From Salisapilia sapeloensis CBS 127946 (lineage: Eukaryota > Protista > Oomycota): a stretch of 64,000 bases of DNA. The notes under the pieces are model-generated. The model was not told the DNA's origin and did not search any database. It saw only the letters and a program-made list of their open reading frames with translations. This document shows, piece by piece, positions 5,569-34,817 of this stretch. The translations under genes and the position numbers were made by a program. The stretch spans positions 1 to 64,000 of the forward strand of contig JAADVB010000043.1 of NCBI GenBank assembly GCA_023334545.1. The letters are read 5' to 3'. Position 1 is the first letter of the stretch. Each line of letters begins with the position of its first letter.

Positions 5569-7170
5569 TTATCGAGTGACTTTTGTATATTCAGCTACAA
5601 CTTGGTCCGTAGTATTAAAAGCTTGTTCAAATTCCCCTTTCTCCATGCCGTACTTGTAATACCAATGAAGATACGCATTCGCGTGAAACTGTTGTCGAGC
5701 ACGATCGAGGTAATGCGACATACTTGGCAAGTGATGCCCATTATTAATGCAGAAGGTGATGGAGCTCCCAGCATCAGCGTGGTTCCACATCTTTTTGTCA
5801 GAGGAAGTTGTCGCGAAAGTCGAGTTAGAGGTATTGTTTGCAGTGATAAAATATCGCTTAGATAGCTTTTCAAGCTCACTTTCGCAAGATTGAGGAAATG
5901 TACTAGCATTATGTCGGGTACAGAATCCTCGGATAAAGGCAATGTTAGCAATCGATTTGGAGATTGCACACTTAGCTTTAGGCTCGACAAATGCCTTCGC
6001 AGTCGCACGAGCTAAGGCTGACATTTGGCTCACGTCGTCAGTCTGACTATCACAGCTCGTCGTCGTTTCCACCGGTAACGCGTGATGCATGCGATATCGA
6101 TAAAATAAGTTGTCATGCTTTCTACTTTGTTTCTTGTAGTAGCCCAGAGGTAATGGACAGCTAGCTGCGAGACCTGTTTTAATGTCTAGGTACTTCATGG
6201 ACTGGATAGGACAGGCTGCTTGTACAAACTCTGGCAGGTTGAAAGGTGACATCGTATATTTTTTACCACGACCGATGGTGTAAATGGGCATGACTATCCC
6301 GGCCAAATCTGTCGTCGCGTTAAGGTTCATTTCTTCTAACGTCACTCTTTCAACATCTTGATTGATGTCATCGTTTGTATGGTCAATTTGATTGTCAAAG
6401 GTCGATGGACACTTGGGCTTGGCCATCAACTTTAATCGACGCATTCGTTTCCAGTATTTGACCGAGTGCACGAGGTCATCATTCATTTTAAATACGACGG
6501 CATCAGCAAATTTATGAAGCTTATCAAATGCAAGTACAGAATTGTAACTTTGGAGTGGAGATTGGGCGACGTTACAGGATGGAGCAATTGCGGTAACTAA
6601 GATATTGTGCTTTGGTTCCATGTCGCGAATAGATTCTAGCACTCGAGAACCTACACCTGAGCCAGTACCACCGCCCATGGAGAGTGTAAGAATGGTGCCA
6701 TTGTATCTGTCCAATGTCTCCATTTCTTTCTGAAAGGATTCTTGTATTTCCTCCATCAGCTCTTGATTTTCAACTAGCTTGGGTTTACTTGCCTTATGAA
6801 TAGAGCGATGTGCCTTGACGATCCTTCGAATGTTAGCAACAGATCGCGCTTTGCTCGGCTTTAAGTTTCGAGCCGGCTTCGCCGAAGAGATTGAATCTAT
6901 CTTATATCCCATAGCCCAATTGTTACCTCGGCCAGACTGACTGATGTTCCAGTGAGCAGGTTGGAAATCTGACCGACATCGATGAATCATGCTATGTACC
7001 ACCTTTGGCTCGGTATCCACAAGAATACAGTGTGCTTTCTTATCATGTTGCTCATGAAAGAGAGGTGAGTGCAAGGTTTCCACTGGTTCTAAAGAGCTTA
7101 ACGAGGCTAGACGCCAGAAGGGTTCACACATTTGAATCCCGCCCTGCCCGATATGAACGTACAACGACAT
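5569..7170 (-). CDS. Divergent tubulin of the delta/zeta ('cryptic') class
   Basis: HIGQGG, ILVDTEPKV, SGRGNNWAMGY, tubulin signature MGGGTGSG, NAYLHWYYKYGME. GRGNNW and AYLHWY resemble zeta/delta tubulin rather than alpha/beta. Intronless, 533 aa. Confidence 0.85.
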   Translation of the reverse strand: MSLYVHIGQGGIQMCEPFWRLASLSSLEPVETLHSPLFHEQHDKKAHCILVDTEPKVVHSMIHRCRSDFQPAHWNISQSGRGNNWAMGYKIDSISSAKPARNLKPSKARSVANIRRIVKAHRSIHKASKPKLVENQELMEEIQESFQKEMETLDRYNGTILTLSMGGGTGSGVGSRVLESIRDMEPKHNILVTAIAPSCNVAQSPLQSYNSVLAFDKLHKFADAVVFKMNDDLVHSVKYWKRMRRLKLMAKPKCPSTFDNQIDHTNDDINQDVERVTLEEMNLNATTDLAGIVMPIYTIGRGKKYTMSPFNLPEFVQAACPIQSMKYLDIKTGLAASCPLPLGYYKKQSRKHDNLFYRYRMHHALPVETTTSCDSQTDDVSQMSALARATAKAFVEPKAKCAISKSIANIAFIRGFCTRHNASTFPQSCESELEKLSKRYFITANNTSNSTFATTSSDKKMWNHADAGSSITFCINNGHHLPSMSHYLDRARQQFHANAYLHWYYKYGMEKGEFEQAFNTTDQVVAEYTKVTR

Positions 7171-7420
7171 CTTATAAGCTTAATAAATGCACCAGATAGG
7201 ATTTATACTTCTCTACTAGGTTCATGTACCTAGTCCGTAAGCTGACGACACAGCAGTTTGCAATCGCTGAACGTAGCGAGTAAAGTGCGAGTTGGAACAA
7301 GATAAGGGGAGAGCCGGTCGTGCTGATAGTCGTCCTCAATACCGCTGCAATTTCTAGCAACGGGTGTGAAAGCAAAAGGATCTAAAATTAGACTTAGCAT
7401 TTGCAAAGTCACGAGATGAG

Positions 7421-10400
7421 ATGCAATCATTCCACAATTCGAGTTTGCTGATGGATATATCAGCAATGGATGGAGAAAACAAGCTAGTAAAATCTCCGGC
7501 GGGGAATAACGAGGTCCTAGAAGTTTCATGTAATCGATCAACTTGCAGTCAAACTCCAGAACACCATGATGCGAAAGAGCAAAAGCTGGATCCTACCATC
7601 CAGAAACGAGATAGTGGTGCCTCAATAATGAGATCACTGTCTTCTAAAAGCGACAGCTTAAAGTATCTGCCGATGACCAATTGGTGGAAGCACAACCTTC
7701 CAGTCTTCGCGAGGCATCGTGGTACCTCATTTTTCTGTTCGGGTCATATAGCTACCTACCTCGGCAATAGTACATTCATGGTTGTATTTGATGACGGTTC
7801 AATCGACTACAGAATACGGCGTGAAGATATTATCATCCGAGAAGTTGCTCCGCTAAACAATGACTCCACTCAGATGGCAGCGAAAGACCCTTGTCCAGAA
7901 GTTGAAAAACCAAAGGATCCGCTTAAAACTATACACAATTTTGTGTCTAACCGCTCTGGAAGTATCAAGTATCTTGAAGTCGGTCCGTCCATCCATCAAA
8001 CGCAACAATCTAGTCGGGGTGTTAGCAGTGTGGCTTGGAAAGATCGGCTACTTGATCTCGAGCCGATAGTGATCGACTTTTCAAAGCATCCGCCACGAGA
8101 GATAAAGCTCAATCTTTATACACATGACTCTGAGCATAAAGAAATTTGGACTGACACTCCATCGTCTGATGAGCTGGCTCAAAATTTGATCTCGGCCGAG
8201 TTAAATATGATGCATCCTTTAGATAATGGAGTACGATACACAGAGGACTCGACACAACTCAGTGACTCAGATGATGACAGTGAAGAGGAGTTTGTGACTC
8301 CATGGCAGCAAATGACACAGACACTTGGGATGGCCAAGTCTCGCACCAGACCCCGGCGCAGCAGCATATCCTCTGTATCACAAGTAGATCGAAATTCTAC
8401 TTCGGTTAAAATGGCGGCAAACTCAACACCAACGAATCCGACAGGCTTTAAAGCATGTTTGATAAATATGTTTCGAAGGGCCAGGTCGTATGGCAAAGTG
8501 ATTCCTGCGATGAACAGTACAACAGGTGACGATTTACTGTTCAAGTCACTTTCGGAATTAGAAAAAGCGCTTTCTTTGCTAAAGCAAGGCCAAGCGCCAC
8601 AGCGTGATGAAAGCTCCCATGCATCGTTTCCGCGGCTCCTTGTGAAGCAGTCGAGTAGTAACGTCGGATCATGTGGAACTGATAGAGTGGTGTTCGACAG
8701 ACCTGAAGATGGATTGCGCGTGTATGGCTCCATCCAGAGTAAATTGTGCAATGGTAATCTTGAAATTGTGACCGAAGGCCAGAATACAGTGCACGTGGAA
8801 GTAGTTCCTGCATCTCGAGTGGAACTTTTACCTTCACTTTCCGAGCTAGAGATGCAAGTAGCGGACCTAAAGCATCGACTGGATGTATTATATACTGGCC
8901 GCAAGGTACAAGTAAGTTTATATCCGGGGAAGAAGTTTACTGGGCAAGGCGTGATCACGATGGAATGCGCGGACAACACGTTTCACGTTCTTATGCATAA
9001 TCGGATTCGACTTGCGAACGTCCCAGCGGATAAACTGATGCCAATAATCGAGAAACGCCGTCGTGCAGAAATCGTTATCACGGACAAGCAATTCATTTGG
9101 TGTTTTAATAAAACCAAGGCATACATAGGCGATCTCGTCTACGTCAAGTGCTATAATGCGGATGACAATTTGGATTGTTTTTATTCGAAACGTCGTGGAT
9201 CGATCATTGGTGGCGATTCTAGCTTTGGAGCGGAGGAGAAAGTGGGCATATTAAACGGTGTCTATTCCAATAATACTGCTGCCGTTGATTTCGCAGATGG
9301 AAGTTCAGGTTACCAGATACCTCCACAATATATTACGAAGAAGAAGCGGCAGCGACCCAATATTGACCTCGATGTCTTGTCGCTTAAGAATGCAGTGTTA
9401 ATGGGTGCTAACCCAGAAACACTCGATGTCGGTTACCAGGTCAAAGCAGACCACCCTATGAAGGGGTCAGTTGAAAGTTGTACGGTTATTAAAAGACATC
9501 CGTCTACAGCGTGTGATCTGCACTTCTCAGACGGTACCATCGCCTTTGAAGTGTTTCCTTCTCAAATGCTGTTAGTTTCTTCATCGAATGCACCTTCTCC
9601 CGCCATCTCGCCACGTTCCAATCGGTCTATGGCTGCATCAGCAGGAAGCGGTAGAAGTGCAAAGCACTTGCGATTATCTTCTGAAATACATTACGATTTT
9701 GCCGTCGGCAAATATGTACTCGGATGGAGCAATCGTTTCGGTAGATACTGCTCTGCAAAAGTCTATGCCAGATCACACAATAAGCCGGCCACAAATATAA
9801 AATATGGTACGTCCATGAACGACATTTCGGAAGCAGACGATTCACTTCCGCTGATGTATACCATCGTCTTTGACTACGGTGAACTACGTGCGAACGTACT
9901 GGAAAGCAATCTTGCACCACTTGACGATGGTGATGCGCTTCACCCAGCAGAGAAGCTGACTAATTTTAGCATCGACACCATCGGCTTTGAACTAGCACCG
10001 TCCAACTTTACCATTGGAGAAGCAGTGATGGCTCGCATGTACAATAGCGGACGATACTTTCATGGCGTCGTTGAGGCGGTGCACTTGTCCGACCGTACTT
10101 GCACCGTGCAATTCGATTCTTCAGCCAAAGATGAGCGGGTTCCTTTCACAAAGATGTTTTCGGTAGACGCACGCAACCTGTACCAGTCCATTAGCGGCAA
10201 ACAGAAGAATCAGTCGGACTCGGCAGACTCGTCCAACAAGAAACGTCGATGGTCAGAGCGGGCCTTCCGTCGCGTTTCGAGCACTTTGACGGATGGATCT
10301 GTGACTGGGACTCGAAGAATGAGGAGATCGAGTAACAATGGTTCTATCAGCAGCATGATCGTCTCAGCAGCTGGATCACTTGCCCGAGCTCGACAACTAG

Positions 10401-31700: not shown

Positions 31701-32306
31701 TGGCCACACGTCTTCCTGCCTATGCTTCCTAAAGAGCTTTTGCAGTACCTCGAATGCCCTACACCATTCATTATTGGTGTTGCAAGAGGTTTGTTGGATG
31801 AAGAGACAATGGACGATGTCTTGAACGATGACGTCGTGGTGCTGGATCTTGACAAGGGACGAATTGTGTCTGGAGAGATGCCATGCCCACTACCTACTTC
31901 CGTCCAGGACGTACTGAAAGAGTCACTGTTTGAATGTCTCAAGCCGAACGTGAGCAAAAGCGATCATGTGTTTGCCGATCACTTTCCAACTAAGCCTCAT
32001 GCGTTCCCTGAAATTGCCGTCCGTAGACTCTTCTACCGAGCCGTAAGATCTCTTATCGGCGAGTATGGTTATTACAGATATGTCTGGACGGACGAGTACT
32101 CAAAGCAGCGGACAGTCTTCTTTGATGAAGCGAGCTACCTCGCAGCATCTCCTGTTGATATGCGTGACTTTCGAACGTTATTCATTGCAACACAGGCTTT
32201 CAGTGAGTACATTGTGTCGTATTACGGCTTTGAAGATGAAATCGCGACCGTGAGGCGAGTAGAAAAGCGTTCGAGTAGTTCAGGTGCGAGTCCGAAACGT
32301 ACTTGA
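28743..32306 (+). CDS. RGS-RGS-DENN domain protein, two exons
   Basis: Intron 29045-29103. RGS-like YYAAWLQ..ESKLFFLASFEEY...IAQKYL...AP and LEDMLMNQ..FFWVFL..ELALWVEIEYDFK. uDENN AFNFRMGDG, cDENN ILLESRVLIIS...YPLLWPHVFLPMLP...LECPTPFIIGV, dDENN FIATQAFSEYI. Confidence 0.85.
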
Positions 32307-32424
32307 GGTACGAGTAGCGCGTACGTTGGTTAGAATGGTACATGTGCATTGTTTGACGTGCCAGAAAGATAAAGAGAAATACGTTTGATCGATGTTCGTT
32401 GTTGGATTTACTCGATCTATCGTG

Positions 32425-34661
32425 TTAGTGTCGTCGGAAGATCGTCAACGCGCAGACGATAGATGCAAAGATGGCAGTTGGTACAAGGACCTTGTAGCTG
32501 CGAGCAAGTTTCTTCTTCTCAACTGAAGCTTGTCCTAACAGTAGACTCTCGTCATCGAAAATGGACGATCGAGTGCGTTGGAAACGGCTGCGGTGCACGG
32601 GTGTCTGGACGGAGAGACCCATCTCCCGGTCAATGATCCGATAGAGCATCGCCACGACAGCTTTCCCGGAGTGTTTAATCATGGGTGTTTTGTTCCACTG
32701 CTTTGTACTGTCGGCGGACTCATCGCTAAACGTCTGGCCTTGTAGCATGACAGGCCGTTCTTGATAGCTCATCTCTTGTGTGGGTAAAAGGAGCTCTTCG
32801 CCTCTTTCAAAGTACGGAGCTAGGACGTTCGAGTCTGGTTTAGTGTTATTTGCAATCACATAGTCGATAACGTCATGACCAAGGTACGAAGACAAGATGT
32901 CCAATGTGTCGTGGAGAGAGTATCCGTCTGTCTGACCACACTGGGTAGCAACGTTGCTGACGTAGACTGTAGCTCCTGAACTACGTTGGATGGCATCTCG
33001 TATACCAGGTACCAGTAGAGGAGATATGATGGATGTGTAAAAGCCACCAGGACTAAGTACAATAATGTCAGCGTTCTCAATTGCTCGAACGGCAGGTGTA
33101 AATGCTTCTGCCGCTTCATCTTTCAGGAACACTCGCTTGATAGGAGCTTTCTTTTTCTCTGTTCCTGTGCTTTCATCTATAACGGTTGGACTCCGGACAT
33201 TCACCTCAGATTCAACGATCGAGCCATCTTCTAACTCCGCGCAAAGCTCCGTGTTTGCTAGTGTCGCAGGGAATACATTGCCGTGAAGGTTGAGAATGTC
33301 TGAGAGAGATGTGACAGCTTTATCAAAGCCGCCTTGAATATCCGTCAGTGCTGCCAAAAGTAAATTACCAAGGCTGCATCCGTCCATAAAGTTTTCTTGG
33401 AAACGATAGTTCATGAGCTTGTTCATTAATTCATCTACACAGCACGAGGTATAAGACAATTCGATGAGGAGAGGAGATGACTGTTATATTACCTGAATCC
33501 GACAACGCCACCATGCAGTTTCGGATGTCGCCAGGAGGAAGCATGCCGAGGTACTTTCGCAATACACCTGAATGTCTCCCAGAATCAAAGACTGTGCATA
33601 CTTGTAAGCAACAGAAACGTGTCAGCTATGAAAGAGTATGAAGTACCAGTGACAACGGCTGTAAGGTCGGCAGGGTAGTGTCTCAATTCTTTTAGCAGCA
33701 CTGCCAGACCAGTGCCGCCTCCCACAGCCACAATCTTCGGAACGACTTCCTGTTGCTCTGCTAGCTTTACAACTGGACCAAGTTCTTCAATAGCTGATAT
33801 CTATTTGCAAGAAATTTGAATGCTGTAATTCGATCCATACACGTAGCAGGAGAAAGATTATAATATACCTGAAAGTCCGATTGCTCACGTTCTTCCGTCG
33901 GCATCACATTAGCATATGTGCCATAAAGCTATTTAAATGGATTAATGGCTCAGCAATAGTGTATTTATATGAGTAAATAAGGAGTCCGGACTGACCATTC
34001 GGACGGTGATGAAGCCAGCTTGATTCGCTGCCTTAATTTCATAAAACGCTTTTCTGCCGACAAAGACAACAGCAGATGGTGGTAACATTAAACGCCTACT
34101 AATCTCTTTCATTGCGACAGTCAGCTGACTCACAGTCGGGTTTGCAGCTACACTAACGCTTTCCTGGAAGAAATCGGACAGTCCGAGTGTTTGGAGGCGC
34201 TCCAACTGCACTTCTCTTTTACCAATGAGCACGAGCCCCAGGCGATAGTTACTAGCTCTTAATTCCTCCAGCGTCTTGTTCGAGTGCTCGAATGGTTCAA
34301 TCGTCTGCGCTTCTGGAATTCGACTGGCGTAATAAGCATCGACGACCCTCGATCCAGCAGCCGAAGACAGCTTCCCATCCTTCACAAGGCTATCTACGAA
34401 AAAAGGGAAGCGTTCTCGATATCCGTACGCAGCGCGAAAAAGCTGAATGGCTTCCACAGCCTCACTTTCGCTCACAAATGCATGCTCCTCGACCAATTGT
34501 TGGACGCCTCGGTCGATGGCGAAGTGAGCGAGGGATCCCGTATGGTCATACAATACATCATCTAAAATCATGACAACAGCCTGTATTCTCCTCTTCTTGG
34601 GGTCTATTTGAAAGCTGTTCATTGTTTCATGTAGCTCATGCATAGAGATAGATGCTGCCAT
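32425..34661 (-). CDS. Fusion of a degenerate HAD-IA domain, a YvcK/GlmR (CofD-related) domain and a C-terminal TM helix; five exons, 662 aa
   Basis: Exons 34661-33996, 33928-33869, 33800-33647, 33591-33493 and 33434-32425 total 1989 nt with all introns GT-AG and frame-consistent. YvcK motifs [50 protein letters not shown]. Confidence 0.88.
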
Positions 34662-34817
34662 TCGGTCTCGAGACCGTTAAATGAATTTGTATCGTGCTTA
34701 GCTGTCAACTTGAAGCTCGTATCGAAATGTTACATCTACTTTACGAAGGAATTTGTATTGCGTTGGTGCAGTGTTTTATGGACGCGGTAATCACCAGCAT
34801 AAAGAAGGTGGAGAATC

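What the first reader, a model, noticed from the sequence alone, without database searches (positions are those of the whole stretch)
32425..34661. Pseudo-HAD + bacterial-type YvcK/GlmR + tail-anchor fusion, hidden by four introns (best candidate for an undescribed system)
Seen: the ORF track shows two separate ORFs, but four frame-consistent GT-AG introns join them into one 662-aa protein. The N-domain follows the HAD-IA layout (reminiscent of archaeal-type TIGR02253 proteins) yet every catalytic motif is altered: motif I DLDD reads ILDD (nucleophile Asp lost), motif II Thr reads LVLIG, motif III KP reads NP, and motif IV GD reads GR. The C-domain has bacterial-style YvcK motifs (GGGTGL; LPPGDIRNC; GNL) with DDGGSSG changed to DSGRHSG and GPGS to SPGG. 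It ends in a hydrophobic helix plus basic tail ([21 protein letters not shown]). Established: Bacillus YvcK/GlmR binds UDP-GlcNAc and tunes hexosamine/cell-wall precursor supply. Inference: a prokaryote-derived, intronised, membrane-anchored sugar-nucleotide sensor or enzyme with a dead phosphatase as a ligand-binding or regulatory module, plausibly tied to wall or glycan precursor control.
Basis: partly seen in the sequence, partly recalled or inferred. Interest (0 to 1): 0.85.

Follow-up and report, generated by a model that had tools for sequence, protein, structure and literature searches.

The report
Oomycete HAD–YvcK gene of prokaryotic origin
A spliced, expressed oomycete gene encodes a membrane-tethered protein, a dead phosphatase domain joined to a bacterial-type sugar-nucleotide-binding YvcK/GlmR domain, that was inherited as a ready-made fusion from prokaryotes, is conserved across oomycetes and appears never to have been studied.

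Summary
Exon 1 is a HAD-fold domain lacking the nucleophile Asp (ILDDV) and the motif IV Asp (GR). Exons 3-5 are a contiguous CofD/YvcK domain. The last 21 residues are a hydrophobic helix plus RRH.

The fusion is not an oomycete invention. HAD-YvcK proteins of about 560 aa, with the same linker, occur in Planctomycetota (anammox Brocadiales and others), Lentisphaerota, Latescibacterota, a Coxiellaceae MAG and DPANN archaea. Their phosphatase motifs are intact. Trees of the whole protein and of each domain place the oomycetes, with a few unnamed eukaryote-like metagenomic sequences, as one clade inside this prokaryotic family. The donor is unresolved. Yeast YNL011C is far more distant.

Orthologues are annotated in many oomycetes as "gluconeogenesis factor", all with the dead HAD motifs and nearly all with the tail anchor. 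I found no paper on them.

In prokaryotes the fusion sits beside, or is fused to, a phosphohexomutase and a sugar-1-phosphate nucleotidyltransferase. The likeliest role is a membrane-tethered nucleotide-sugar sensor or regulator; this is untested.

It is a new variant of a known kind, of moderate interest.

The parts
33996..34661 (-). Exon 1 (aa 1-222): start codon and the whole HAD-fold domain. Motif I is ILDDV at 34554-34568, motif II LVLIGK at 34218-34235, motif III NPT within 34134-34148, motif IV VGRK within 34050-34064.
   Evidence: Pfam PF00702/PF13419 and TIGR02253-like match; motif alignment; coordinates; transcript contigs start at 34665-34686.
33929..33995 (-). Intron 1 (67 nt, GT..AG, 34% GC)
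   Evidence: Joint 33928|33996 in all 4 RNA runs; GC content.
33869..33928 (-). Exon 2 (60 nt; [20 protein letters not shown]): the inter-domain linker
   Evidence: RNA joints on both sides. It aligns with the linker of contiguous prokaryotic fusion ORFs, e.g. Jettenia LHGRYKNEPSMNEYDRPHYK.
33801..33868 (-). Intron 2 (68 nt, GT..AG)
   Evidence: Joint 33800|33869.
33647..33800 (-). Exon 3: end of the linker and start of the CofD/YvcK domain, with GGGTGL at 33705-33722
   Evidence: PF01933 profile positions 1-29; coordinates.
33592..33646 (-). Intron 3 (55 nt, GT..AG). The acceptor used is at 33592, not the upstream AG at 33601.
   Evidence: Joint 33591|33647. Orthologues read TAVVTVFDSGR with no extra residues.
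33493..33591 (-). Exon 4: FDSGRHSG (33566-33589) and LPPGDIRNC (33515-33541)
   Evidence: PF01933 profile positions 29-61; coordinates.
33435..33492 (-). Intron 4 (58 nt, GT..AG). The position is probably shared across oomycetes.
   Evidence: Joint 33434|33493. Database models of a Pythium-like protein (P0168) and of Aphanomyces astaci (P0021) carry extra in-frame residues exactly after ALSDS, which looks like a retained intron at the same site.
32425..33434 (-). Exon 5: the rest of the CofD/YvcK domain (SLGNLL, SPGG...[31 protein letters not shown]), a low-complexity spacer, the tail anchor and the stop codon
   Evidence: PF01933 profile positions 65-269 and TIGR01826 at 198.6 bits; PDB homologues 2ppv/2o2z.
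32428..32490 (-). C-terminal tail anchor: hydrophobic helix [18 protein letters not shown] (32437-32490) plus basic RRH (32428-32436)
   Evidence: Highest hydropathy window of the protein, 2.08. The same feature occurs in nearly all oomycete orthologues. In the AF2 model of the P. infestans orthologue it is helix 673-689, after a disordered spacer.

Best explanation
Shown. The locus is one expressed, five-exon oomycete gene for a 662-aa protein. It has an N-terminal HAD-fold domain without the catalytic nucleophile, a conserved linker, a YvcK/GlmR-type (CofD-superfamily) domain and a C-terminal tail anchor. HAD, linker and YvcK together descend from a prokaryotic HAD-YvcK fusion gene. That gene entered a eukaryotic lineage once, before the oomycetes diversified. 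It then gained spliceosomal introns and host-like base composition.

Inferred from the sequence comparison. In the line leading to oomycetes it lost the phosphatase catalytic residues and acquired a membrane anchor.

Inferred mechanism. The protein sits on the cytosolic face of an internal membrane. It works as a nucleotide-sugar (UDP-GlcNAc-like) binding sensor or regulator, not as a phosphatase. The YvcK domain binds the nucleotide sugar: the Tyr matching B. subtilis GlmR Y265 is kept and R301 is Lys. The inactivated HAD pocket serves as a phospho-sugar-binding or protein-contact module. Two of the three residues needed for Listeria GlmR uridyltransferase activity are absent, so regulation is more likely than catalysis. 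The probable pathway is hexosamine or NDP-sugar supply for glycan and wall synthesis.
For: Gene model and expression: spliced transcript contigs in 4 runs.

Domains. The AF2 model of the P. infestans orthologue has pLDDT 85.6, and its CofD part matches YvcK structures 2hzb/2o2z with a target-normalised TM-score of 0.93-0.95.

Prokaryotic origin:
- After oomycetes, the best hits are fused proteins of about 560 aa.
- The full-length tree gives the eukaryote clade 100/100, inside the prokaryotic fusions.
- The CofD-only tree gives 97/85.
- The HAD-only tree gives 100/98, nested among the HADs of fused proteins, with 18 of 23 stand-alone HADs outside.
- The linker is conserved.
- Bacterial YvcK proteins are 31-34% identical; yeast YNL011C is 14%.

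Age: orthologues occur in both the Saprolegniales and the Peronosporales lineages, and the gene tree follows these two lineages. Gene GC is 48.3% against 47.5% for the window.

Dead HAD: all oomycetes read [IMFTL]L[DE]DV and G[RK], where prokaryotes read FDLDDT and GD.

Tail anchor: conserved in oomycetes and absent in prokaryotes.

Nucleotide-sugar link:
- GlmR binds UDP-GlcNAc (PMC7525490).
- Listeria GlmR makes UDP-GlcNAc (PMC10128056).
- DPANN and Scalindua loci carry a PGM/PMM mutase and an NTP_transferase next to or near the fusion.
- Bacterial proteins of about 930 aa fuse CofD, NTP_transferase, Hexapep and HAD.
- Brocadia has a UDP-glucose/GDP-mannose dehydrogenase next door.

Residue mapping: D40 kept, D41 is S, N198 is P, Y265 kept, R301 is K.
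Against: No binding, activity or localisation data exist for any member of the fused subfamily. The residue mapping rests on an alignment offset to the 2o2z chain, not on a Listeria or B. subtilis sequence aligned here. The Listeria result was a triple mutant, so the role of each residue is unknown.

The D-S-G-R signature is family-wide and could support a different chemistry, so the YvcK domain may still be an enzyme. The CofD domain is very strongly conserved (75-79% identity across the Pythium/Phytophthora lineages), which fits catalysis as well as binding.

The gene-neighbourhood evidence comes from two prokaryotic lineages plus the fusions, and it is not universal: Brocadia lacks the mutase and transferase neighbours. 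The target membrane is unknown.

The trees are unrooted. The prokaryote-to-eukaryote direction rests on outgroup rooting with weak basal support (77/83) and on parsimony of distribution.
Confidence: 0.55

Rival explanations
1. The YvcK domain is an active enzyme anchored at a membrane. It would be a nucleotidyl- or phospho-transferase acting on a sugar phosphate or NDP-sugar, like GlmR uridyltransferase or CofD/FbiA phosphotransfer. The dead HAD domain would only hold or present the phospho-sugar substrate.
For: [quoted passage not shown] CofD/FbiA are true transferases of the same fold. GGGTG, D of DSGR, LPPGD, NxxTQxGQTD and the H of the C-terminal motif are invariant from prokaryotes to oomycetes. 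The CofD domain is the most conserved part of the protein.
Against: D41 and N198, two of the three residues mutated in the inactive Listeria GlmR3, are S and P/T in oomycetes. GPGS is changed to SPGG in oomycetes only. No activity has been shown for any member of the fused subfamily.
Confidence: 0.28
2. The protein is a scaffold or adaptor whose ligand pockets no longer matter. Both domains would be pseudoenzymes kept for protein-protein contacts at a membrane, for example with GFAT (the eukaryotic counterpart of GlmS) or a glycan synthase, as B. subtilis GlmR contacts GlmS and YvcJ.
For: B. subtilis GlmR acts through protein contacts with GlmS and YvcJ (PMC7525490). The oomycete lineage changed both the HAD catalytic motifs and YvcK motifs (SPGG, N198 equivalent) and added an anchor.
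Against: The nucleotide-binding glycine loop and most pocket motifs are still invariant. That conservation is hard to explain without a small-molecule ligand. The yvcJ/rapZ partner gene was not seen next to the prokaryotic fusions examined.
Confidence: 0.12
3. These are two separate genes (a HAD gene ending at the stop at 33942 and a YvcK gene starting at the ATG in exon 2), or bacterial contamination, or a vertically inherited eukaryotic UPF0052 gene of the YNL011C type.
For: The ORF track alone shows two ORFs, and exon 2 contains an in-frame ATG.
Against: Single spliced transcript contigs cover both domains in all four runs. The gene has four spliceosomal introns, host-like GC, and RGS-DENN and Ras-family neighbours. 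Fused orthologues exist in more than 20 oomycete genomes. YNL011C is only 14% identical and ranks 29th, behind 28 bacterial proteins.
Confidence: 0.03

Closest known systems
Prokaryotic HAD-YvcK fusion proteins (about 555-570 aa), annotated 'UDP-N-acetylglucosamine-binding protein YvcK' in Ca. Brocadia, Jettenia, Scalindua, Loosdrechtia, other Planctomycetota, Lentisphaerota, Latescibacterota, a Coxiellaceae MAG and DPANN archaea
   Same: Same domain order, a homologous linker, the D-S-G-R-x-S-G signature and 36-39% identity over the full length. Both domains and the whole protein group with them in trees.
   Different: The prokaryotic proteins keep HAD motif I DxDxT, the motif II Thr/Ser and motif IV GD. 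They also keep GPGS and the Asn matching GlmR N198. They have no C-terminal membrane helix and no introns. None has been characterised experimentally, as far as I could find.
GlmR (formerly YvcK) of Bacillus subtilis and Listeria monocytogenes: a UDP-GlcNAc-binding regulator of GlmS and an accessory uridyltransferase
   Same: Same fold: B. subtilis O06974 gives TM 0.94 by the hit at 33% identity. The match passes the TIGR01826 cut-off. GGGTG, LPPGD, GNL, TQxG(E/Q)TD and the Tyr matching Y265 are conserved.
   Different: GlmR is a single soluble domain of about 320 aa in a yvcJ-glmR-whiA operon. DDGGSSG there is DSGRHSG here. The N198 equivalent is P and the R301 equivalent is K. This protein has an added pseudo-HAD domain and a tail anchor, and it is eukaryotic and intron-bearing.
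CofD/FbiA (2-phospho-L-lactate transferase of coenzyme F420 synthesis)
   Same: Same superfamily and Pfam family PF01933; the fold is shared (6uvx, 3c3d).
   Different: Only 12-16% identity. TIGR01819 scores 22.8 against a cut-off of 257. I did not check oomycete genomes for an F420 pathway.
Saccharomyces cerevisiae YNL011C (eukaryotic UPF0052 protein)
   Same: A eukaryotic protein with a CofD-like fold.
   Different: 14% identity, rank 29 behind 28 bacterial proteins. It has no HAD domain and belongs to a different lineage of the family.
TIGR02253-type HAD-IA phosphatases (Pyrococcus PH1655, PDB 2hoq; Methanopyrus glyceraldehyde-3-phosphate phosphatase) and N-acetylneuraminate-9-phosphate phosphatase NANP
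   Same: Best structural and HMM matches of the N-terminal domain, with a HAD-IA core-plus-helical-cap layout.
   Different: TIGR02253 scores 60 against a cut-off of 170. The nucleophile Asp, the motif II Thr, the motif III Lys and the motif IV Asp are all replaced.

Membership tests
HAD superfamily (PF00702 / PF13419) | Profile match above the curated cut-off (Rossmannoid HAD fold) | tested here: met
   PF00702 scores 40.9 bits (cut-off 26.4) and PF13419 39.0 bits (cut-off 23.8) on exon 1. Structural matches are 2hoq and NANP.
HAD superfamily, as an active phosphatase | Motif I DxDx(T/V) with the nucleophile Asp, and a motif IV acidic residue (GD) | tested here: not met
   ILDDV replaces DLDDT and VGRK replaces VGD(R/K). 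The same holds in all oomycete orthologues, while the prokaryotic fusions keep both motifs.
TIGR02253 HAD subfamily | NCBIfam score above the cut-off of 169.75 | tested here: not met
   60.2 bits. It is the best-scoring HAD model but far below the cut-off.
YvcK/GlmR (TIGR01826, within PF01933) | Profile match above the curated cut-off | tested here: met
   Exon 5 alone scores 198.6 bits (cut-off 196). Exons 3 and 4 add 27.5 and 37.8 bits, covering profile positions 1-61.
YvcK/GlmR | N-terminal GGGTG loop and the conserved LPPGD, GNL and TQxGxTD motifs | tested here: met
   [21 protein letters not shown] and [11 protein letters not shown] are present.
YvcK/GlmR as a uridyltransferase (Listeria GlmR) | D40, D41 and N198 (the residues mutated in inactive GlmR3) | tested here: not met
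   Mapped through 2o2z numbering (chain index + 2): ADDGG corresponds to FDSGR (D kept, D is S), and TSVLPN corresponds to TSIISP (N is P). The mapping is by alignment offset, not by a direct Listeria alignment.
YvcK/GlmR as a UDP-GlcNAc binder (B. subtilis) | Y265 and R301 | tested here: inconclusive
   The Tyr is conserved (LAPYFERG aligns with 2o2z Y265). The Arg of the C-terminal RHD motif is Lys (MIKHSG) in oomycetes. Binding itself cannot be tested with these tools.
YvcK/GlmR | yvcJ(rapZ)-glmR-whiA operon context | tested here: not met
   This does not apply to the eukaryotic gene. In the prokaryotic fusion loci examined, the neighbours are endonuclease V, UDP-glucose dehydrogenase, PGM/PMM and NTP_transferase, not yvcJ or whiA.
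CofD proper (TIGR01819, F420 synthesis) | Equivalog score above the cut-off of 257 | tested here: not met
   22.8 bits.
Tail-anchored membrane proteins | A single hydrophobic helix within about 30 residues of the C-terminus and no N-terminal signal or other membrane helix | tested here: met
   The only window with hydropathy above 2 is aa 641-659, followed by RRH and the stop. The next best window (1.69) lies in the globular domain. The orthologue model shows a helix there. Membrane insertion itself cannot be tested here.

The most novel reading that the evidence does not exclude
Oomycetes, and some unidentified protists, run a GlmR-like metabolic checkpoint of prokaryotic origin. A tail-anchored double pseudoenzyme or sensor reads UDP-GlcNAc or hexose-phosphate status at an organelle surface and gates hexosamine or wall-glycan precursor supply. 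I found no counterpart of the fusion outside oomycetes among named eukaryotes. If plants and animals lack it, it could be an oomycete-specific control point and a selective target.
Probability: 0.22. Interest if true: 0.7.

Novelty: new variant of a known kind. Interest (0 to 1): 0.5.

Why it matters
YvcK/GlmR is a much-studied bacterial cell-envelope checkpoint, and it is regarded as essentially prokaryotic. This locus shows a clear eukaryotic descendant of a little-known prokaryotic HAD-YvcK fusion. It is fixed and expressed in a whole class of major plant and animal pathogens, and it has been remodelled in an informative way: the phosphatase was killed and a membrane anchor was added.

It is a clean, ancient interdomain transfer that a published systematic screen of oomycete HGT does not list (PMC5023847). 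Among named eukaryotes in the searches, only oomycetes turned up. So it is a candidate lineage-specific node in nucleotide-sugar and wall-precursor metabolism.

The prokaryotic side matters too. The fused subfamily, with its phosphohexomutase and nucleotidyltransferase neighbours and its four-domain fusions, gives a testable context for what YvcK-type proteins do outside Firmicutes.

Tried and rejected
1. My first splice model used the acceptor AG at 33601 (665 aa). RNA joints show 33592, giving 662 aa.
2. The two-gene model, with an ATG in exon 2, was rejected by the spliced contigs.
3. Brocadiales as the specific donor was suggested by the first hit list but is not supported. In the full-length tree the eukaryote clade sits in a polytomy with Lentisphaerota, other Planctomycetota and a clade rich in DPANN archaea, and Brocadiia are one step further out.
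4. In FastTree a group of stand-alone CofD proteins of about 335 aa appeared as sister to the eukaryotes (82). IQ-TREE moved that group elsewhere.
5. I tried to name the unnamed eukaryote-like homologues by cluster look-ups, contig context and the Atlas. These showed only eukaryote-type neighbours (MACPF, PRMT, Nop53, Topo II) and 60-66% GC, with no taxon.
6. Literature searches for oomycete + HGT + CofD, 'gluconeogenesis factor' + Phytophthora, and PITG_00501 found nothing; a search for '2-phospho-L-lactate transferase' with oomycete names listed only oomycete papers that lack the enzyme term. One search was wasted because 'HAD' matches the common word.
8. The spliced 662-aa protein could not be handed to the structure and search tools by reference. 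Exons were searched separately, and the P. infestans orthologue was modelled instead.
Full report
**Observation**

The minus strand between 32425 and 34661 carries two ORFs of 239 and 344 aa. Reading the strand, I built a five-exon model.

Four runs whose Logan contigs hold about 80% of the sampled words of the stretch were laid on it. The runs come from three samples of one study. Each gave a contig of about 2.04 kb covering roughly 32372-34686, with four joints: 33928|33996, 33800|33869, 33591|33647 and 33434|33493. All are GT..AG on the minus strand.

The contigs lack the introns, so they derive from spliced RNA. The two ORFs therefore lie on one mRNA.

The intron 3 acceptor is nine bases downstream of my first guess.

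The introns are 55-68 nt long and 32-41% GC. The exons are 48% GC, like the window as a whole at 47.5%.

The neighbours are an RGS-DENN gene and a Ras-family GTPase gene. The gene is therefore a resident eukaryotic gene and not contamination.

**Domains**

Exon 1 matches the HAD profiles PF00702 and PF13419 above their cut-offs. Its best NCBIfam model is TIGR02253, but far below that cut-off.

Exons 3, 4 and 5 match consecutive parts of PF01933 (profile positions 1-29, 29-61 and 65-269). Exon 5 alone reaches the TIGR01826 (YvcK) cut-off. This continuity independently supports introns 3 and 4.

The nearest solved structures of the C-terminal domain are the structural-genomics YvcK proteins 2ppv, 2o2z and 2hzb.

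An AlphaFold model of the P. infestans orthologue was built on a 52-sequence alignment. It has mean pLDDT 85.6 and pTM 0.69.
- Its CofD part superposes on 2hzb/2o2z with a target-normalised TM-score of 0.93-0.95 at 34% identity.
- Its HAD part is closest to Pyrococcus PH1655 (2hoq) and to NANP.
- The model ends in a helix (residues 673-689) after a disordered spacer.

In the window protein, the only strongly hydrophobic 19-residue stretch is aa 641-659. It is followed by RRH and the stop codon.

**Relatives**

Searching with exon 5 found oomycete proteins first (54-77% identity). Next, at about 1e-52, came a large set of proteins of about 565 aa carrying HAD plus CofD domains, from anammox Planctomycetota.

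A profile search returned full-length fused orthologues from many oomycetes:
- Phytophthora (PITG_00501 and many other species), Nothophytophthora, Peronospora and Peronosclerospora;
- Pythium, Globisporangium and Lagenidium;
- Aphanomyces and Achlya.

Most are named 'gluconeogenesis factor' and carry both Pfam domains.

The search also returned six unnamed clusters of 640-733 aa from metagenomes and Logan assemblies. Two of their contigs carry eukaryote-type genes: MACPF-EGF, PRMT and Nop53 on one, type II topoisomerase on the other. These contigs are 60-66% GC. I could not name the organisms.

A scan of species-representative prokaryotic genomes found the full-length fusion in:
- Brocadia, Scalindua, Loosdrechtia and other Planctomycetota;
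- DPANN archaea (Iainarchaeum, Woesearchaeota and others);
- a Coxiellaceae MAG;
- Latescibacterota.

One further representative is from Lentisphaerota.

**Alignment**

The linker encoded by exon 2 ([20 protein letters not shown]) aligns with the linker of the contiguous prokaryotic ORFs. The whole region from the last HAD strand to GGGTG is conserved. This is independent support for exon 2 and for homology of the fusion as a unit.

HAD motifs:
- The prokaryotic proteins read FDLDDT (motif I), (T/S)xG (motif II) and VGD (motif IV).
- Every oomycete reads [IMFTL]L[DE]DV and VG[RK].
- Peronosporalean-lineage species have also lost the motif II hydroxyl residue.
- The motif III lysine is missing from the prokaryotic fusions as well.

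One unnamed eukaryote-like group keeps DLDDT and GD. Another has TLDDT and GN.

YvcK motifs:
- D-S-G-R-x-S-G replaces the canonical DDGGSSG in the entire fused subfamily.
- The eukaryote-like sequences, oomycetes included, share TVFDSGR, where prokaryotes have TVTDSGR.
- SPGG in place of GPGS is specific to oomycetes.

The hydrophobic C-terminus with a basic end is present in nearly all oomycete orthologues and in one unnamed eukaryote-like sequence. It is absent from all prokaryotes.

**Phylogeny**

I built three IQ-TREE trees (LG+C20 PMSF).

CofD domain: 76 sequences, including 50%-identity representatives from an exhaustive HMMER search. The oomycetes plus the unnamed eukaryote-like sequences form one clade (97/85). 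It lies inside a radiation made mostly of HAD-fused prokaryotic proteins, when rooted on stand-alone YvcK.

Full-length tree: 57 fused proteins. The eukaryote clade has 100/100 support. It joins a polytomy with a Lentisphaerota sequence, a Planctomycetota pair and a clade rich in DPANN archaea. Brocadiia lie just outside.

HAD domain alone: the eukaryote HADs form a clade (100/98). It nests among the HADs of fused proteins, and 18 of 23 stand-alone HADs fall outside.

Both domains therefore share one history. Within oomycetes the tree separates the Saprolegniales from the Peronosporales/Pythiales lineage.

In a structure search of Swiss-Prot models, 28 bacterial gluconeogenesis factors (31-34% identity for the best) precede yeast YNL011C (14% identity).

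I conclude that an already fused prokaryotic gene was transferred once into a eukaryotic lineage before oomycetes diversified. The donor is unresolved.

Two caveats apply. The trees are unrooted, and the basal node of the fused radiation is weak (77/83). The direction of transfer rests on outgroup rooting and on the much wider prokaryotic distribution.

**Function**

- B. subtilis GlmR binds UDP-GlcNAc through Y265 and R301, and it acts on GlmS and YvcJ (PMC7525490).
[quoted passage not shown] A D40A/D41A/N198A mutant is about 100-fold less active (PMC10128056).

I mapped these residues through the alignment to 2o2z, taking Listeria numbering as the chain index plus 2. That offset fits both the DD pair and the Asn.
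- The window keeps the first Asp.
- It has Ser for the second Asp, as does the whole fused subfamily.
- It has Pro for the Asn. Other oomycetes have Thr, and prokaryotic fusions keep Asn.
- The Tyr aligned with Y265 is kept (LAPYFERG).
- The Arg of the C-terminal RHD motif is Lys (MIKHSG).

Gene neighbourhoods in prokaryotes also point to nucleotide-sugar metabolism.
- In three DPANN loci, a PGM/PMM-type phosphohexomutase and/or a sugar-1-phosphate nucleotidyltransferase lies directly after the fusion or within about 1.5 kb.
- In Scalindua both genes lie within a few kilobases.
- Brocadia has a UDP-glucose/GDP-mannose dehydrogenase next door.
- Several bacteria fuse CofD, NTP_transferase, Hexapep and HAD into one protein of about 930 aa.
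- yvcJ and whiA were not seen.

My reading is that the ancestral prokaryotic protein works in the sugar-phosphate to NDP-sugar pathway with an active phosphatase. The oomycete descendant has lost phosphatase chemistry and probably GlmR-type uridyltransferase chemistry. It keeps its ligand pockets and is tethered to a membrane. That fits a sensor or regulator of nucleotide-sugar supply better than an enzyme. This step is inference. An active transferase remains a serious rival.

**Novelty**

I found no paper on the oomycete protein. The systematic screen for prokaryote-to-oomycete transfers does not list it (PMC5023847).

The protein is, however, annotated with both domains in public databases. 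The fusion architecture is common in prokaryotes, and both domains belong to known families. It is therefore a new variant of a known kind: an HGT-derived, tail-anchored YvcK with a pseudo-HAD domain. It is not a new kind of system.

The points to correct are that the fusion predates the eukaryote and that DSGRHSG is a subfamily signature, not decay.

Noticed in passing
P0202, P0212, P0303, P0315, P0393 (proteins); P0208: Bacterial proteins of about 930 aa combine CofD/YvcK, NTP_transferase, hexapeptide-repeat and HAD domains in one chain. An Omnitrophota protein combines NTP_transferase with CofD. This looks like a whole sugar-1-phosphate activation module fused to YvcK.
   Followed up: partly
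L018:7683-8390, L021:7649-9795, L025:7582-9003; L005:10185-12726: In DPANN archaeal MAGs the HAD-YvcK gene is followed, directly or within about 1.5 kb, by a phosphohexomutase and/or a sugar-1-phosphate nucleotidyltransferase (both in L021). Scalindua has both genes within about 5 kb, plus a second stand-alone HAD gene right after the fusion (L005:7708-8400).
   Followed up: partly
L003 (P0199), L001/L002 (P0209, P0222), P0204, P0205, P0211, P0213, P0216, P0229: Unnamed GC-rich (60-66%) eukaryote-like contigs from metagenomes and Logan runs carry HAD-YvcK genes that form one clade with the oomycetes. One group keeps intact phosphatase motifs, one has TLDDT and GN, and one (P0199) has a tail anchor like the oomycetes. 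The organisms are not identified. L001/L002, with many short ORFs without matches, an ankyrin-repeat gene and Topo II, could even be a giant virus.
   Followed up: partly
Atlas clusters: Two clusters of phage (Uroviricota) proteins of about 570-610 aa carry a CofD domain, some with a Hydrolase_3 (HAD) domain. This may be a separate phage-borne CofD-HAD combination.
   Followed up: no
L023 (Coxiellaceae MAG), 6001-7674: A Coxiellaceae MAG carries a very divergent copy of the fusion on a long branch (1.31). If Coxiellaceae members live inside eukaryotic cells, as I recall, the gene could have reached it by transfer.
   Followed up: no
window 32300-32400: The 3' ends of the plus-strand RGS-DENN gene (stop at 32306) and of this minus-strand gene (stop at 32425) converge within about 120 nt. 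In run X1 one 5.8-kb contig runs through both, so the transcripts overlap or abut.
   Followed up: no
window 34662-34817: Only about 156 nt separate this gene's ATG from the ATG of the divergent Ras/Rab-family gene. The transcript contigs start 4-25 nt upstream of the ATG, so the 5' UTR is very short and the two genes probably share a promoter region.
   Followed up: no
window 33592-33601: Two AG dinucleotides nine bases apart could both close intron 3 in frame. Only the downstream one (33592) is used in the assembled transcripts. Contigs would not show a rare alternative form.
   Followed up: partly
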